Below, one piece after another: positions 25,771 to 61,717 of a stretch of DNA of 64,000 bases. Within the stretch, counting starts at the first letter, position 1. Each line of letters begins with the position of its first letter. The notes below the pieces were generated by a model. It searched no databases. It saw only the letters and a list, made by a program, of their open reading frames with translations, and was not told where the DNA came from. Made by a program: the position numbers and the translations under genes. This DNA comes from Macrostomum lignano (Eukaryota): assembly GCA_002269645.1 (NCBI GenBank), contig NIVC01002678.1, positions 1 to 64,000 on the forward strand. The letters run 5' to 3'.

Positions 25771-28700
25771 CTAACTGAATATAGCATAAAAATTTTATGA
25801 TTTTGTGCGACTGACGTCTACTACGAGTATTGATATTCAATACAGACAATGGCAGCTATGGTCAACTGATGTCATTCAAAGAGGGACTCGATTTAAACAT
25901 CTAGTTGGCCTGCAGCAAACCTGCAGCTCATCACAAAAGTTAAGGAGGGAGAATAAAGGCCAATCTCAAACTTGCAGCTTCGCTTGACGCAACTAAAAAC
26001 GAGACGTTCCATCCCGACTTCGCTCTTTAGGGTGTCTGGAAATACATGCTCGTGTCAAGGGAGATTGCATTGCAAATTATTTCTTATTTCTAGATCAAAA
26101 GCAATTCCGAAACCTTTGTTGCAGGGTTACGGATAGCCAACAAAAATGTGACCATCTGTTGGATCAAGCAGTGCTGGCATCGAGTTCGATGGACGGCAAA
26201 GCATTCTGGCAACCGACTGTTGACTACGAGATACTCGTATGATGCAAAACTAGGAAAACTAGTTTTTTTAATACTCGTATAAATACATGACGCTGTCAAC
26301 ATCTCAAGCTTCAACGGTTTCAATATTTGATTCAATAATTAAATTTTTCGTCATTAAGGGGTCGTACAATAAAGCTGTCGTAGCGTAAGTTCGATCGTGC
26401 GTCGGAACTTTTACACTGCGGAGAGAGAAGCTAAAATCGATCTTATCTTACGATGGCTTTATAGAACAGGCCCAAAGTGTTGAACTGATTCATATACATG
26501 TAGAAGCTTTCATCGCATATAGCGTTCAAGATTACAACAAAAAATACCTGCTCGTACCTGATAAAGTAGTATTTAAGGAATACTTCAGCCCCAAAGTGCC
26601 TAAAATTCAATTTGCAGAGATAGGTGAAACTGGGCACAATAAAGAGAGCCTCAAAGAAAGCTGGGTTATCAAGATCTTACGTTTGCCCACTGGATGAGCG
26701 GCAACAAGCCCCGTGACCGATGGCTGCCCACCAACTTCTCGCTCCCGCCAGACACGCCGCTTCCAGCTGAGGAGGACTTCTGCACCAGCCCAGCGCCGCG
26801 CTATCTGACGCATCCTAACCGCTTGACCCTATTGGTGGGTTGCGTCTTTTGTTCTGTTGTTGCTTTTAATCTGGTTACTTTTAGACCTCTGTTAGGTCTA
26901 ATGAAGAACTTAAAGGCTCGGCCTGCTCTTGAGTAAATCGACGCGATGAGTTGTTGGCTCTCTTTCCAGCCGATCTCTCGGTCTGCTTTAATTATTTGTC
27001 CCTTCATGCCACAGCTCTCTTTAGCCACCGCCAATTCAGTGCGGTCCGCTCGTACGCTCTTATAGTAGAAAAAAGCCATCAAGAACTTACCCTGTTATTC
27101 GCAAGTATTAATATAACACAAGCACACGTACTGCATATGCAATAGTCGCGCGCTCTTTTGTACATGCAGTTGTCAATATTATTCAGACGCTCTCAATGGG
27201 GTAATTAAGATCGTTACGTATTATTCTTATCGACTTTGTTATCTATCAATGACGCTTTTCTAAATTCACCCGCGATTGTACGAGTACACGCGTGCATGAT
27301 AGTGAAAGTCCTACACTGTTGGGCCATTATATCACAGTACTCGTACCAACTACTCCATTGTAAAAAACTGTATCGTTAATAAATATATGACAAAGAAGTG
27401 AACTTATGCCTTTCGAATGCTTTTCAGTAGCCATGTGTTTGTTATATTTGTAGAATAAAATCTGCTTTCACGGCAAAATGTTCATCAATACGAGCGAGTA
27501 AGATAATTTCCTGTGATGCTGAGCATGCTGAATTACTCGGCAATGTAGGCGTACACACCAACTTCAGCGATATTGTGCACGTAATTACTGGATTCAGTTT
27601 CAGCAATCAACAAATATTTTATATCCGCACACCAAAGCAATCGTACATTGAGTACTGACGAAGAATATCAGCGCTGGTTTTACAACTATTAACAAATTTT
27701 TTTTCAGAATTTAATAGAGTGAATTCCAGCAAAGGGACAGCAGAAGAGCCGGAGGTATTTCTTTTGCGCCAGATGATAAACCCTCTCACAGTTGCCGCTT
27801 TGTCCAGTCTGTACTGCAAATAGGATAATTCATCAGGTCCTCCAGCTCCATACCGGCTTCCAAAATTGATTACTCCGTATGTGCTTCGTTATCAACAGTT
27901 CTTTCACATTTGTCAAAGCTCGGATCGCACTTCATGAGCAACTTAGCTGAAAAATTTAGGATAGGCAAAAAGCCAAACAAAAGTAATAAACAAACTGTGG
28001 AAAGCGCAATCACTTACGGTGACATTTCTCCGTGCCAAAGGTAGTGCCAGAGCCGGGGCATAGGTCACAATGCGCCATTCCAATGCGGCGTTTCAGGGCG
28101 AAGTTCAAATCGCAATTGTGGCATTTTTGGGAACCGGGCTCACTGGCGTAGGTGCCAGCGGGACATTTGGAGCACTTGCTGCTGCCTGATTTCAAAGAGA
28201 AAGTACCTGCCGGGCACAAAGTGCAGTTGGCAGCGTTTCCAAGTGAGAATGAGCCTCCTTTGCACAGCTCACATGCTGTGGAGCCTGCGTAACTCCAGCT
28301 TCCAGCAGGGCACTGGCTGCAGTTTGTTGAGGATATTTGGTCAACAAAGCTCCCAGCAGGGCACGGGGTGCAAGAAGCTGACCCAGCCCTACTGGAATAG
28401 CTGCCTTCGGCACACGAAGTGCAGTTTACCGATCCCGCGCTGGGAGTAAACGAGCCTGGAGGGCACTTGGCGCACGGGATGCCCTCGGCTGGACTGAACT
28501 CGCCCCTCGTGCAGTTGTTGGCGCAGCTCACTGAGCCCTCAGCACTCGATGTTCCAGCAGGGCAAGCACTGCAAGATTTCTGACCTGGCTTGTCGGCGAA
28601 GAACCCCGATGAGCACAAATGGCACTGCGCCTGTCTCTCTGCTTTATTGAACTGTCCGACTGGACATGGAGTGCACTCCGTTTGACCTCGCTGAGCTGCG

Positions 28701-30062
28701 AACAAGCCGGCACTGCAGGCCGCGCACGAAGTAGATCCGTTAAAACTGCTTGCTGTTCCAACATGGCACTGCTGGCACTGTACCGATCCTGGCTTGGAAG
28801 CGAAATTTCCTGGACTGCAGAGCATGCAATTCACAGTCGCTTGTGATGCAGAAAAACTTCCAGGAGCGCATGGCAAGCAGTTATGATTTCCCGTTGTGTT
28901 CTTGAAAGTACCTGGTTGGCAGGGCACACACAGGTTTTCCTTGCTGTCACTCAGTTGGTAGCCAACCGGACACTCTGACAAGCACTGCACTGTCCTGACT
29001 CTCCTACCACCAATCGAATTCCACAATTCAACGCGCACATTGCGACACTGGAAGCAGCTGGTGTCATCTTTTGCTAGATTGCAGTCGATGCACTCTTTGT
29101 GACAATCCAGGATGCAGTGACCATCAACCAGCTTGTAGTTATTGTTCAAACACTCCACCTGCGGCATGTCCTTGGTGAGGTGAATGTCCATCAGTGACAC
29201 AGACTTCGAGCCCGCTCCGAACGTGTAGAAAGACAGGCGGCTGTACTGGCTGTCCGGTCGGAACTTGTACCCAGAGTAGACAGTGCCGATCTCGCTGTTC
29301 GAGCCCGCCTTACCGAACTGCATTAGAACTGATCCATTGGCCTGATTCACACACAAGAAGTAGGACTGGTACAGGTTCTTGTCTCCAAGTGTCCCCATTC
29401 CCTTCTGATAGTCTCTCTTTTGCGGTTTCATTGCTTTGTAGAATATCACTCCATCCATATTGATCTGCAGGTAGTACCATGTTGTGTGGTCTCTTGGTAT
29501 GGACGCGAATATAACAAAGATGTCTCCAGCAGTCGCAGCCGTAAAGTAAAGACAGTTTTCTTCCCGATCAGGGTCCAGTCTGTGAGAGTTCAACCAACGA
29601 ACGTTGCACGGAATTGATGCCGCAGCAGTGGAGTTTGCGCCTTTTTGCCCTTCTATCCGAGAAGCTCTAGCAACTGTTGTACCCTCTATCCAGTCTGGAA
29701 GGTTTTGGTTGCGGCGCTTTGATGCAATAAAGTCTAGCGGATCGATATGGAAGAAGCCCGTCTCCTCCTCATAGGTGAGGATGATGCTCCAGATACAGAT
29801 CTTTGTCTCAGCTGGCTTGAAGCCTTCGAGCTGACAGCCTTCGTACAAGTGCGCATGATGGTGCCCTGGCTCGGTCGCAAACCACCTGTCTTTTAGATAC
29901 GTCATCACATACTTGGCTTGCGATTTCAACAAGTTCGGAATATCCTGGGGCAGATCAAAGGATATTAAAAATACTTACTTACTTACTACTGACGGGGGGC
30001 GCAGGCGCCGCGAATAGGCCGCGAGGCCCCTATCGCAACCCCAAGGTAAAAGAGCACAAGGA

Positions 30063-60100: not shown

Positions 60101-61717
60101 AAAGAGTGCATTGACTGTAATCTAGCAAAAGATGACACCAGCTGCTTCCAGTGTCGCAATGTGCGCGTTGAATTGTGGAATTCTATTGGGGGCAGAAGAG
60201 TCAGGACAGTGCAATGCTTGCCAGAGTGTCCGGTTGGGTACCAACTGAGTGACAGCAAGGAAAACCTGTGTGTGCCCTGCCAACCAGGTACTTTCAAGAA
60301 CACAACGGGAAATCATAACTGCTTGGCATGCGCTCCTGGATGTTTTTCTGCATCACAAGCGACTGTGAATTGCATGCTCTGCAGTCCAGGAAATTTCGCT
60401 TCCAAGCCAAGATCAGTACAGTGCCAGCAGTGCCATGTTGGAACAGCAAGCAGGTTTAACGGATCTGCTTCGTGCGCGGCCTGCAGTGCCGGCTTGTTCG
60501 CAGCTCAGCGAGGTCAAACGGAGTGCACACCCTGTCCAGTGGGACAGTTCAATAAAGCAGAGAGACAGGCGCAGTGCCAGTTGTGCTCTGCGGGGTTCTT
60601 CGCCGACAAGCCAGGTCAGAAATCGTGCACTGCTTGCCCTGCAGGAACGTCGAGTGCTGAGGGCTCAGTGAGCTGCGCCAACAACTGCAAGAGGGGCGAG
60701 TTCAGTCCAGCCGAGGGCATCCCTTGCGCCAAGTGCCCTGCAGGCTCGTTTACTCCCAACGCGGGATCGGTAAATTGCACTTCGTGTGCCGAAGGCAGCT
60801 ATTCCAGTCGCGCTGGGTCAGCTTCTTGCACCCCGTGCCCTGCTGGGAGCTTTACCGACCAAATGCACTCAAAAAACTGCAGCCAGTGCCTTGCAGGAAG
60901 CTGGAGTAACACAGGCTCTGCAGCATGTGAGCTGTGCAAAGGAGGCTCATTCTCACTTGGAAACGCTGCCAACTGCACTTTGTGTCCGGCGGGTACTTTC
61001 GCTTTGAAATCAGGCAGCAGCAAGTGCTCCAAATGTCCCGCTGGCACCTACGCCAGCGAACCCGGTTCACAAAAATGTCACGATTGCGATTTGAACTTTG
61101 CCTATAAACGCCGCATTGGAATGGCTCATTGTGACCTGTGCCCCAACTCTGGGACAATGGCATTTGATGTTTCTCCTGACGTTTGTCACCGTAAGTATTC
61201 GCACTTCTAACTCGTAATATTCTGGATAGTAGTTTTGTGGCTTTTAATGCATTTAAGGCATACATTTTCAGGAAAGTTGCGAATGAGGTGCCATCGGAGC
61301 TCTGTCGAATGTGAAAAAACTATTGATAACGATGTTAACACGTACGGAGTATTAAGTTACAGAAGCAATACAACTGGAGGATCTGTAGAATCATCCCATA
61401 CCAGCATGGTCTACGCACTCGACCAAGTTGCTGATGTGGTAGGACTTATCATCTGGTCTGATGATAAAGACGACCCTGGCTTTATTCTGAAATACGTAAT
61501 TACAGATTCTAGTCACAATGTTCTTAGTCGTTGTCTATCTTCAAAGTCAAAGTCAAAGTCAGTACACCCGTACTACATTTTCAAGTGCGGTGCTACTAAT
61601 GCAAAGTTTTTTGTAATTACTGTAACCGAACCCAATAAGCACTACCCACACCCGCGATATAGAATCGGTGAAGTTGGTCTGTATGCCATGCTTGATGCAC
61701 AGGATTTTACCAAGTGA
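57137..61717 (+). CDS. Secreted MACPF/perforin-like protein, ~1499 aa, 2 exons (57137-61190, 61272-61717); intact copy C
   Basis: Signal peptide MHACLAAVIAIALLGFQVEA; MACPF signature WGTHFIRSGKFGG and closing VEAQGG; central beta-rich domain; furin-like Cys segment and ~17 CxxCxxGx[FY] units. A phase-1 GT-AG intron precedes a terminal exon with a galactose-binding/discoidin-like pattern (TIDNDVNT...LDQVADVVGLIIW...FKC....KFFVI...IGEVGLY). Confidence 0.92.

What the first reader, a model, noticed from the sequence alone, without database searches (positions are those of the whole stretch)
27533..61717. Perforin-like toxin family with a conserved pore-forming chassis and a hypervariable terminal lectin-like exon
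Seen: exon 1 of copies A and C is ~97% identical at the protein level (copy B is similarly close where retained). Identity collapses from the last ~10 codons of exon 1 onward. Exon 2 (A 27946-27533, B from 47762, C 61272-61717) keeps only a scaffold (KL.M.C....C, T.DN, TYG, Y.LD..A.V.G.I, EVG.Y), about one-third identical by eye. Established: MACPF proteins use ancillary domains, often lectins, for target selection. Inference: a modular effector/toxin system in which the pore module is homogenised by gene conversion or recent duplication while a single-exon recognition tip diversifies or is swapped. This is the best candidate for an undescribed system here.
Basis: partly seen in the sequence, partly recalled or inferred. 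Interest (0 to 1): 0.88.

Follow-up and report, generated by a model that had tools for sequence, protein, structure and literature searches.

The report
Flatworm perforin-like genes with divergent tips
A flatworm (Macrostomum lignano or a close relative) carries a small family of secreted perforin-like genes whose large body is kept almost identical between copies by recombination, while a last small exon encodes very different lectin-fold binding tips; this is a real, apparently undescribed variant of a known theme, not a new kind of system.

Summary
The window has three copies of a MACPF gene. Only C (57137-61717, +) is intact. A (-) is split by a 5.4-kb LINE and its tip exon has frameshifts. 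B has lost its 5' half and has an in-frame stop.

Bodies are about 96-97% identical (dS ~0.09, dN/dS ~0.15). Identity starts to fall about 110 codons before the end of exon 1. It drops to 50-75% across the intron, the tip exon and about 350 bp of 3'UTR, then recovers to about 78-88% further downstream.

Intact paralogues on M. lignano contigs have equally different tips (26-41% amino-acid identity, dS saturated at 1 or more). So the divergence is not pseudogene decay.

Body and tip have different histories. Loci L005 and L006 share a tip that is 98% identical, yet they are not nearest neighbours in the body.

The tip is a divergent F5/8-type-C / F-type-lectin-fold domain (AF2 pLDDT 84.5; Foldseek matches to F5/8 type C, CBM32 and the lectinolysin lectin domain). 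It lacks the canonical fucose-binding triad.

Best reading: bodies evolve in concert by gene conversion or unequal recombination, while old tip lineages are retained. A toxin role, sugar binding and ongoing hypervariability are untested.

The parts
57137..61190 (+). Copy C, exon 1 (1351 codons plus 1 base). It encodes a signal peptide (57137-57196), a Gly-zipper-like segment (from ~57971), the MACPF domain (~58142-58834, with the signature WGTHFIRSGKFGG at 58364), a ~400-aa middle region with no family match, and a Cys-rich Ephrin_rec_like/TNFR-like stalk (60041-61190).
   Evidence: Open frame. Pfam MACPF E=3.8e-15 and Ephrin_rec_like E=9e-34. Motif positions. The stalk matches Chlamydomonas mastigoneme Mst1, 8tx1, E=2e-30.
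61191..61271 (+). Copy C intron (81 nt, GTAAGT...CAG, phase 1).
   Evidence: An intron is at the same position and phase in A, B, D (L001), E (L003) and F (L004).
61272..61717 (+). Copy C tip exon (148 codons plus stop). It encodes a divergent F5/8-type-C / F-type-lectin-fold beta-sandwich. This is the only intact tip in the window.
   Evidence: AF2 pLDDT 84.5. Foldseek PDB hits to F5/8 type C, CBM32 and lectinolysin. The tip profile finds multi-FA58C proteins.
60853..62064 (+). Hyperdivergent island in C coordinates. It covers the last ~330 bp of exon 1, the intron, the tip exon and the first ~350 bp of 3' flank. Identity to A and B falls from ~97% to 50-75% here, with higher identity on both sides.
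   Evidence: Sliding-window identities, regional identities against shuffled baselines, and dS by segment.
61748..61790 (+). Conserved 3'UTR core (AGCRGATTTTATTC...AAATATA...GGCYAC), 30-90 nt after the stop. It is present in A, B, C, D and E but not in G or G2.
62065..62444 (+). Downstream flank shared by A (26676-27054), B (48568-48921) and C only. It marks the 3' end of the locally duplicated unit.
54332..57136 (+). Upstream part of unit C. It holds a 31-bp satellite (54332-56020), a 15-bp repeat (56780-56931) and promoter-proximal DNA that is 85-95% identical to the upstream region of A.
35352..37458 (-). Copy A, exon 1, 5' part (open frame, ATG at 37458).
29973..35351 (-). LINE (non-LTR retrotransposon) inserted in exon 1 of A. 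It has intact ORFs (RT plus RNase H) and a 17-bp target-site duplication, ATTTTTAATATCCTTTG (29956-29972 and 35352-35368).
28018..29972 (-). Copy A, exon 1, 3' part (open frame). It is followed by the intron at 27947-28017.
27533..27946 (-). Copy A tip pseudo-exon. It has at least 2 frameshifts and premature stops. An A-type tip also exists as M. lignano model P0038.
45613..47689 (+). Copy B exon 1 remnant. It lacks the start codon and the first ~515 codons, has a ~438-bp stalk deletion, and has a frameshift near 47392-47407.
47762..48120 (+). Copy B tip pseudo-exon (in-frame TAG at 48033-48035, central part lost). It is preceded by the intron at 47690-47761.

Best explanation
The window holds a local cluster (one live gene, two pseudogenes) of a Macrostomum gene family. 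The encoded protein is secreted and about 1,500 aa long. It consists of a signal peptide, a MACPF (perforin-like) domain, a ~400-aa domain of unknown kind, a rod of about 9 or more Ephrin_rec_like/TNFR-like cysteine repeats, and a terminal 135-148-aa beta-sandwich of the F5/8-type-C / F-type-lectin fold. The terminal domain is encoded alone on the last exon.

Evolutionary mechanism (shown by sequence comparison). Recombination between paralogues keeps the ~4-kb body exon nearly identical. This is either gene conversion or unequal crossing-over, and the 95-97% identical bodies are themselves the substrate for it. The exchange stops in the last stalk repeats. As a result, each locus keeps its own old tip lineage together with its own intron and 3'UTR.

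Function (inferred). The tip docks the protein to a target surface ligand, the stalk acts as a spacer, and the MACPF domain oligomerises and inserts into the membrane. Different paralogues would therefore address different targets with the same effector. The most plausible setting is defence, or attack on microbes or prey.
For: Architecture:
- The intron is at the same site and phase in seven loci.
- A 4.9-kb Logan contig (L002) carries body and tip in one uninterrupted ORF, so it looks like a transcript.
- NCBI gene models join the two exons.

Body against tip:
- For every pair among A, B, C and D, the body has dS of 0.07-0.11 and dN/dS of 0.14-0.28.
- Among the intact tips C, D, E and G, dS is 1.0-1.6, dN is 0.55-0.92 and dN/dS is 0.5-0.9.
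- Positive selection cannot raise dS, so the tips coalesce much earlier than the bodies.

Discordant histories:
- G (L006) and G2 (L005) share a 98% identical tip and the same downstream flank.
- In the body they are far apart (p = 0.039-0.044). G is nearest to D (0.016-0.020) and G2 is nearest to A or C.
- They become nearest neighbours only from about C 60,970 onward.
- The flank upstream of L006 is 94% identical over 3 kb to the flank upstream of window copy A. Yet its tip region is only 74% identical to A's, and the downstream flanks are unrelated.

Other evidence of recombination:
- Informative sites in the body form a patchwork (C+D, A+C, A+G2, D+G, B+C and so on). Of 1035 site pairs, 446 fail the four-gamete test.
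- A PHI-type permutation gave 0 of 2000 for six sequences.
- Stalk repeat number varies exactly at the boundary: B is -438 bp, and D, G and G2 are +303 bp.
- GC3 is 0.585 in the body and 0.39-0.49 in the tips of the homogenised group. This is compatible with GC-biased conversion.

Tip fold:
- The tip of paralogue F hits PF00754 at E=6e-4.
- The tip profile retrieves proteins made of repeated PF22633/PF00754 domains.
- The AF2 model has pLDDT 84.5 and pTM 0.80.
- Foldseek against PDB gives F5/8 type C (2kd7, E=4.7e-5, TM 0.63), CBM32, galactose oxidase, the S. pneumoniae fucose-binding module and the lectinolysin lectin domain.
Against: - The PHI-type test was not significant in two other sequence subsets (p = 0.35 and 0.09).
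- Only six body sequences were available, and one is partial.
- The intron and the first 200 bp of 3'UTR are better conserved than the tip's synonymous sites. Explaining this needs either constraint on them or conversion tracts that reach into them.
- A, B and C also share a downstream flank. For these three copies, homogenisation would have to act on both sides of the tip.
- No expression, binding or lysis data exist.
- The C tip itself has no Pfam hit.
- The sugar-binding triad of F-type lectins is missing.
- Discoidin-fold domains can also bind lipids or proteins.
- Some MACPF proteins do not form pores.
Confidence: 0.6

Rival explanations
1. Recent burst of whole-gene duplication, followed by very fast positive selection or local hypermutation confined to the tip. 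No conversion of the body is involved.
For: - Tip dN/dS (0.5-0.9) is several-fold higher than in the body (0.15).
- The tip's coding DNA is more diverged than the adjacent intron and 3'UTR.
- A, B and C share flanks on both sides of the island.
Against: - Synonymous divergence in the tips is saturated (1.0 or more), against 0.09 in the body.
- The non-coding intron and UTR are also 2-4 times more diverged than the outer flanks.
- G and G2 share a tip but not a body.
- The body sites are a recombinant patchwork.
Confidence: 0.12
2. Exon shuffling: each copy acquired its tip by importing an unrelated discoidin or lectin exon from elsewhere in the genome.
For: - Synteny breaks at the tip. L006 shares A's upstream flank, but neither its tip nor its downstream flank.
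- Family members elsewhere end in other domains: Kringle pairs in P0003 and P0005, and C-lectin, CUB, SRCR or SUEL domains in amphioxus.
Against: - All Macrostomum tips share a family-specific scaffold: KLRMxC...ECEKTIDNDVNTYG, Y.LD...VKGxIxW, and AEVxLYA.
- They share the same intron phase and position.
- A to E share a conserved 3'UTR core.
- The tips are therefore diverged homologues, not independent captures.
- There are no spare tip cassettes within 10 kb on either side of any locus.
Confidence: 0.1
3. The pattern is an artefact of pseudogene decay or of mis-assembled haplotypes.
For: - A and B are pseudogenes whose tip exons carry frameshifts or stops.
- On my own knowledge, not tested here, the M. 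lignano genome is highly duplicated.
Against: - Intact tips (C, D, E, G, H) differ just as much.
- Neutral decay cannot exceed the ~10-20% divergence of the surrounding flanks.
- A is inverted relative to B and C and carries a LINE. B is truncated. The copies lie in one contiguous window and have different tips.
Confidence: 0.03
4. The gene architecture and evolution are as described, but the protein is not a lectin-guided lytic effector. In this reading the MACPF domain is non-lytic (as in astrotactins, BRINPs and Torso-like) and the discoidin-fold tip binds a protein or lipid. The setting could be adhesion, development or reproduction, where fast-evolving recognition domains are also common.
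For: - The canonical fucose-binding His/Arg/Arg triad is absent from all the tips.
- Stalk-plus-tip proteins without a MACPF domain exist in the same species (P0031, P0032, P0073). The tip therefore has a use independent of pore formation.
- phmmer finds no solved pore-forming MACPF structure for the body.
Against: - The MACPF signature motif is intact, and the body is under purifying selection.
- Pairing of a lectin-fold domain with a pore-former recurs in lectinolysin (fold match) and in Pomacea PV2 (own knowledge).
Confidence: 0.25

Closest known systems
Uncharacterised MACPF / Ephrin_rec_like proteins of Branchiostoma, Lingula and Owenia (for example LOC118430059)
   Same: Same overall architecture, and alignable over 60-89% of the length at 31-36% identity: MACPF, middle region, Ephrin_rec_like stalk, then a C-terminal ancillary domain.
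   Different: Their C-terminal domains are of different families: C-type lectin, canonical F5/8 type C, CUB, SRCR, SUEL lectin or EGF. Whether their bodies are homogenised is not known. None has been characterised.
Lectinolysin (Streptococcus mitis cholesterol-dependent cytolysin with an F-type lectin domain; PDB 3lek, 3le0)
   Same: A pore-former of the MACPF/CDC superfamily joined to a domain of the same fold as the tip (Foldseek TM 0.54-0.56). The lectin domain directs or enhances action on glycan-bearing cells (own knowledge).
   Different: It is bacterial, the lectin domain is N-terminal, the canonical fucose triad is present, there is no cysteine-rich stalk, and it is a single gene without a tip repertoire.
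Pomacea perivitellin-2 (MACPF chain plus tachylectin chain), and apextrin/ApeC proteins
   Same: Invertebrate MACPF proteins paired with a carbohydrate or peptidoglycan-recognising module (own knowledge; ApeC papers listed).
   Different: The recognition folds differ (tachylectin beta-propeller, ApeC). PV2 is a two-chain AB toxin. No conserved-body, divergent-tip paralogue series has been reported for them.
Perforin, complement C6-C9 and MPEG1
   Same: They have a MACPF domain with the signature motif, are secreted, and carry ancillary membrane- or target-binding domains C-terminal to the MACPF domain.
   Different: Their ancillary domains are C2, EGF, TSP, LDLa or MABP. phmmer detects no sequence similarity to solved structures.
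Gene families with a conserved exon and a fast or old-diverged exon, such as conotoxin precursors and other venom and immune families (own knowledge)
   Same: Sharp, exon-linked contrast in divergence within one gene family. Diversity is retained in the target-binding part.
   Different: Here the conserved part is a 4-kb effector exon that recombination demonstrably exchanges between loci. The divergent part is a folded 140-aa domain whose divergence is old rather than demonstrably ongoing.

Membership tests
MACPF (PF01823) | Profile match above Pfam's gathering score | tested here: met
   57.0 bits against a cut-off of 21.5, E=3.8e-15, residues 341-571 of the ORF. The same holds in paralogues P0001 and P0004.
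MACPF (PF01823) | Signature motif (Y/W)-G-(T/S)-H-(F/Y)-x6-G-G | tested here: met
   RWGTHFIRSGKFGG at residue 409 of copy C. The motif definition is from my own knowledge.
MACPF (PF01823) | Bent beta-sheet with two helical clusters (TMH1/TMH2) that refold into the pore; oligomeric pore formation | not tested
   No structure prediction was run on the body, and phmmer finds no solved MACPF relative. Pore formation needs an experiment.
Ephrin_rec_like / TNFR-like cysteine repeats (PF07699) | Repeated profile matches above threshold | tested here: met
   115 bits in 7 stretches. Matches the rod-forming repeats of mastigoneme Mst1, 8tx1, E=2e-30.
F5/8 type C / NedA-like galactose-binding domain (PF00754, PF22633) | Profile match above Pfam's gathering score | tested here: not met
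   The C tip has no hit at E up to 10. The paralogue F tip scores 20.4 bits against a cut-off of 28.2, and the P0004 tip scores 16 bits against 27.8.
F5/8 type C / NedA-like galactose-binding domain (PF00754, PF22633) | Remote homology and fold (eight-stranded jelly-roll beta-sandwich) | tested here: met
   The tip profile finds 46 representatives at E up to 1e-3. The non-family representatives checked consist of repeated PF22633/PF00754 domains at the matched stretches. The AF2 model has pLDDT 84.5. Top Foldseek hits are F5/8 type C, CBM32, APC10 and galactose oxidase, with TM 0.5-0.63 and E down to 4.7e-5.
F-type (fucose-binding) lectin | Binding triad H-x24-R-x-D-x4-R/K | tested here: not met
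   In alignment A5 the related non-flatworm domains carry HT...WNRxDCCxxRL. The tips have SDDKDDPGF (C), PRKYYDVSS (D), CKNPYDDSF (E), RNKKSRMSF (G) and similar in the same place. The motif is from my own knowledge.
Pore-forming toxin | Demonstrated lysis or toxicity; expression in a venom, secretory or immune tissue | not testable with these tools
   No expression or activity data. No paper mentions these genes.
Concerted evolution by gene conversion or unequal crossing-over | Paralogue bodies more similar than expected from the age of linked regions, phylogenetic discordance along the gene, and a mosaic of incompatible sites | tested here: met
   dS is 0.09 in the body and 1.0 or more in the tips. 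G and G2 are discordant between body and tip. Of 1035 site pairs, 446 are incompatible. The PHI-type test gave 0 of 2000 in one set but p=0.35 and 0.09 in two others, so the formal test is mixed.

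The most novel reading that the evidence does not exclude
The family may be a germline recognition repertoire for one effector. In this reading, the homogenised 4-kb body acts as a recombination handle that reassorts a standing set of old, selectively maintained tip lineages among loci and haplotypes. The flatworm could then point one pore-forming machine at many different targets. This would be an innate-immunity or predation diversity system not described in Platyhelminthes. 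The MACPF-less stalk-plus-tip proteins would serve as soluble decoys or opsonins.
Probability: 0.2. Interest if true: 0.75.

Novelty: new variant of a known kind. Interest (0 to 1): 0.52.

Why it matters
If the tips do set target specificity, the natural paralogues are almost ideal reagents, because the effector is about 96% identical and only the tip differs. They could show how an ancillary domain directs a MACPF pore-former. That question is still open for most invertebrate MACPF proteins.

The locus is also a clean case of exon-bounded concerted evolution. A recombination boundary sits in a repeat array, with old lineages preserved beyond it.

Finally, it points to an uncharacterised bilaterian family (flatworm, amphioxus, brachiopod, annelid) with the architecture MACPF, stalk and variable tip.

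Tried and rejected
- **Pfam on the C tip alone.** No hit.
- **First AF2 model from a 5-sequence alignment.** pLDDT was 73, and Foldseek gave only weak, mixed hits (E of 2e-3 or worse). I replaced it with a model from a 24-sequence alignment.
- **Alternative tip cassettes (Dscam-like mutually exclusive exons).** tblastn with seven tip types found exactly one tip per gene in the window and in the fetched loci (up to 10 kb each side). Rejected.
- **Extra copies in window 1-27 kb.** None found.
- **Whether the downstream shared element (C 62065-62444) is a common repeat.** It occurs only after A, B and C in about 190 kb of available sequence, and has no coding potential.
- **Second homologous-protein search with a tip profile.** It returned only two proteins because of the word prefilter. 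It did not give a census of tip types.
- **Literature searches.** Searches for a Macrostomum MACPF family, for MACPF plus Ephrin_rec_like, and for the gene identifiers all found nothing relevant.
- **ApeC (apextrin) identity of the tip.** Considered and dropped, because there is no Pfam ApeC hit and the fold match is to discoidin/CBM32.
- **dN/dS as a test of positive selection between tip types.** Uninformative because dS is saturated. The only within-type pair (G and G2) has about 4 differences.

Full report
**What is there**

The window is eukaryotic. Its closest relatives are contigs of the free-living flatworm Macrostomum lignano (assembly GCA_002269645.1). Coding and non-coding DNA are 94-96% identical, and no locus is identical. 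The source is therefore M. lignano, in another line or a duplicated region, or a very close relative.

The finding's span holds three copies of one gene.

- **Copy C (+) is intact.**
  - The ATG is at 57137 and exon 1 runs to 61190.
  - An 81-nt GT-AG phase-1 intron follows.
  - The tip exon is 61272-61717.
  - The product is 1,499 aa.
- **Copy A (-) is a pseudogene.**
  - It has the same exon 1, but a 5.4-kb LINE (29973-35351) splits it. The LINE has intact RT and RNase H ORFs and a perfect 17-bp target-site duplication.
  - Its tip exon (27946-27533) needs at least two frame shifts and contains stops.
- **Copy B (+) is a pseudogene.**
  - It starts only at 45613, which corresponds to codon ~515.
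  - It lacks ~438 bp of the stalk and is frameshifted.
  - Its tip exon (from 47762) has an in-frame stop and has lost its centre.

So there is one live gene and two pseudogenes.

**The protein**

- The N-terminus looks like a signal peptide (MHACLAAVIAIALLGFQVEA; by eye).
- The MACPF domain is above Pfam threshold (57 bits against 21.5) and has the signature WGTHF-x6-GG.
- A ~400-aa middle region matches no family.
- The cysteine-rich stalk of Ephrin_rec_like/TNFR-like repeats scores 115 bits. Its only solved relative is the rod of the Chlamydomonas mastigoneme protein Mst1.
- The tip is 148 aa.

**The tip fold**

- The C tip has no Pfam hit of its own.
- The tip of a paralogue (P0002) hits F5/8 type C below threshold (E=6e-4).
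- A profile of five tips, searched against 1.84 billion representatives, found 46 proteins. Apart from family members, the ones checked are built from repeated PF22633/PF00754 domains at the matched stretches.
- With a 24-sequence alignment, AlphaFold gave pLDDT 84.5 and pTM 0.80.
- Foldseek's best PDB matches were F5/8-type-C domains, CBM32 modules, APC10, galactose oxidase, a pneumococcal fucose-binding module and the lectin domain of lectinolysin (E down to 4.7e-5, TM 0.5-0.63).
- The fold call is therefore sound.
- The His/Arg/Arg triad of fucose-binding F-type lectins is not conserved in any tip. 'Lectin-like' describes the fold, not a demonstrated activity.

**The divergence pattern**

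Between A, B and C, the DNA identity profile is as follows.

| Region (C coordinates) | Identity |
|---|---|
| Upstream | 85-95% |
| Exon 1 up to ~60850 | ~97% |
| Last 330 bp of exon 1 | ~90% |
| 61153-62064 (intron, tip exon, first 350 bp after the stop) | 50-75% |
| 62065-62444 | 82-90% in MAFFT windows; 76-78% by BLAST with gaps |

- Body dS is 0.07-0.11 with dN/dS of 0.14-0.28, for every pair among A, B, C and the M. lignano copy D. This matches the divergence of the outer flanks.
- The anomaly is therefore a ~1.2-kb island of excess divergence centred on the tip, not an unusually conserved exon 1.
- Pseudogene decay cannot explain the island, because neutral decay cannot exceed the flanks.
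- Intact tips are equally different. Six or more tip types occur in M. lignano on bodies that are about 95% identical where a body is available:
  - C;
  - D (P0001);
  - G (P0026 and P0068);
  - H (P0028);
  - A-like (P0038);
  - E (P0006, on a more diverged body).
- More distant subfamilies also exist.
- Among the intact tips C, D, E and G, amino-acid identity is 26-40% (C-D is 38-41% depending on the alignment), dS is 1.0-1.6 (saturated), dN is 0.55-0.92 and dN/dS is 0.5-0.9.
- Selection on protein sequence cannot inflate dS. The tips must therefore be much older lineages than the bodies they sit on.

**Discordant histories**

- Loci L005 and L006 carry the same tip type (98% identical) and the same downstream flank.
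- In the body they are among the most distant pairs (p = 0.039-0.044). G is closest to D (0.016-0.020) and G2 is closest to A or C.
- They become each other's nearest neighbour only from about C 60,970 onward.
- The flank upstream of L006 is 94% identical over 3 kb to the flank upstream of window copy A. Yet it carries a G tip, and its downstream flank is unrelated.
- Informative sites along the body form a patchwork of incompatible groupings. Of 1035 site pairs, 446 fail the four-gamete test.
- A PHI-type permutation gave 0 of 2000 for the six-sequence block. It was not significant in two other subsets.
- The switch lies in the last stalk repeats. This is exactly where repeat number varies between copies: -438 bp in B, and +303 bp in D, G and G2.
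- GC3 is 0.585 in the body and 0.39-0.49 in these tips. This is compatible with biased conversion in the body only.

The tip is refined from 'hypervariable' to 'a set of old lineages that escape homogenisation'.

**What remains odd**

- The intron and the first 200 bp of 3'UTR are better conserved than the tip's coding DNA.
- The 3'UTR has an invariant core, AGCRGATTTTATTC, in A to E.
- This implies either constraint on those non-coding parts, conversion tracts that reach into them, or extra amino-acid-driven change in the tip. I could not separate these.

- The intron is at the same codon and phase in A, B, C, D, E and F.
- Deposited gene models join the exons.
- A 4.9-kb Logan contig from a related worm carries body and tip in one uninterrupted ORF, so it looks like a transcript.
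- The copies are not haplotype artefacts. A is inverted and LINE-bearing, B is truncated, and all three lie in one window.
- There are no spare tip cassettes near any locus, so alternative splicing of tips is excluded.

**Mechanism and comparison**

- *Most likely mode of action (inference).* The tip binds a surface ligand, the rigid stalk spaces it from the effector, and the MACPF domain oligomerises and inserts. Paralogues differ in address, not in effector.
- *Closest functional parallels.* These are lectinolysin, a bacterial CDC with a lectin domain of the same fold, and Pomacea PV2 and apextrins (own knowledge).
- *Closest relatives by descent.* These are uncharacterised MACPF / Ephrin_rec_like proteins of amphioxus, Lingula and Owenia. 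They end in other recognition domains such as C-lectin, F5/8C, CUB, SRCR and SUEL.
- *MACPF-less relatives.* Stalk-plus-tip proteins without a MACPF domain exist in M. lignano.
- *Untested.* A toxin role, sugar binding and pore formation.
- *Literature.* I found no paper on this family.

**Verdict**

This is a real feature with the observation largely right. It is a new variant of a known kind: a pore-former with a lectin-fold targeting domain, and concerted evolution with an excluded recognition exon. Interest is moderate.

Noticed in passing
window 29973-35351 (-): A LINE sits inside exon 1 of copy A. Its ORFs are intact (372 aa; 190 aa; 1003 aa with RVT_1 and RNase H). It has a perfect 17-bp target-site duplication and a (GTAA)n-type tail, so it looks recently active.
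   Followed up: partly
window 54332-56020; also 38758-39023 and 44114-44350: A 31-bp satellite (54.5 copies upstream of C) recurs upstream of each gene copy and upstream of the M. lignano loci L005 and L006. It is part of the duplicated unit.
   Followed up: partly
window 42398-42910: A 59-bp tandem repeat (8.7 copies, 98% matches). The same repeat forms a much longer array (about 2.8 kb) in L006 at the syntenic place.
   Followed up: partly
window 49440-50342 (-), repeat 49647-50118: A 57-bp tandem repeat lies inside a 300-aa ORF rich in Ala, Gly, Ser and Asp. It has no Pfam hit. Whether it is a gene is unknown.
   Followed up: no
window 411-6229: A cluster of mobile-element or virus-like ORFs. 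One has a YTDTDS polymerase-B-type motif (411-1274, no Pfam hit). One is an rve integrase (4676-5713, E=2e-8). One has a parvovirus-type phospholipase A2-like domain (5501-6229, PF08398, E=9e-14). Possibly a Maverick/Polinton-like or endogenous viral element.
   Followed up: partly
window 61748-61790, 48191, 27466 (-); L001 13837; L003 12845: An invariant 3'UTR core, AGCRGATTTTATTC...AAATATA, lies 30-90 nt after the stop in tip types A to E but not in G or G2. It is better conserved than the coding tip. Its function is unknown (it could be regulatory or a poly(A)-region element).
   Followed up: partly
M. lignano proteins P0031, P0032, P0041, P0073: These are predicted secreted proteins (signal-like N-terminus by eye) made of the stalk plus a tip, with no MACPF domain. 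P0073 and P0031 are nearly identical in the first half of the tip and diverge in the second half, so there is mosaicism inside the tip too.
   Followed up: partly
window 57137-61717: GC3 drops from 0.585 in the body to 0.385 in the C tip. It is 0.40-0.49 in tips D, E and G, but 0.58-0.60 in the tips of the distant, non-homogenised relatives F and P0004.
   Followed up: partly
window ~57971-58110: A glycine-zipper-like hydrophobic stretch (GFNLGAIGGIVGGAIGAIAGGPAGAALGATLGGAVGG) lies just before the Pfam MACPF match. It is conserved in paralogues P0003 to P0005. It might be part of a membrane-inserting region.
   Followed up: no
L003 (P0006) and L006 (P0026): Two M. lignano loci have lost most of the MACPF-coding part of exon 1 but keep an open stalk and tip. 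This is either a natural deletion or a gene-model artefact.
   Followed up: no
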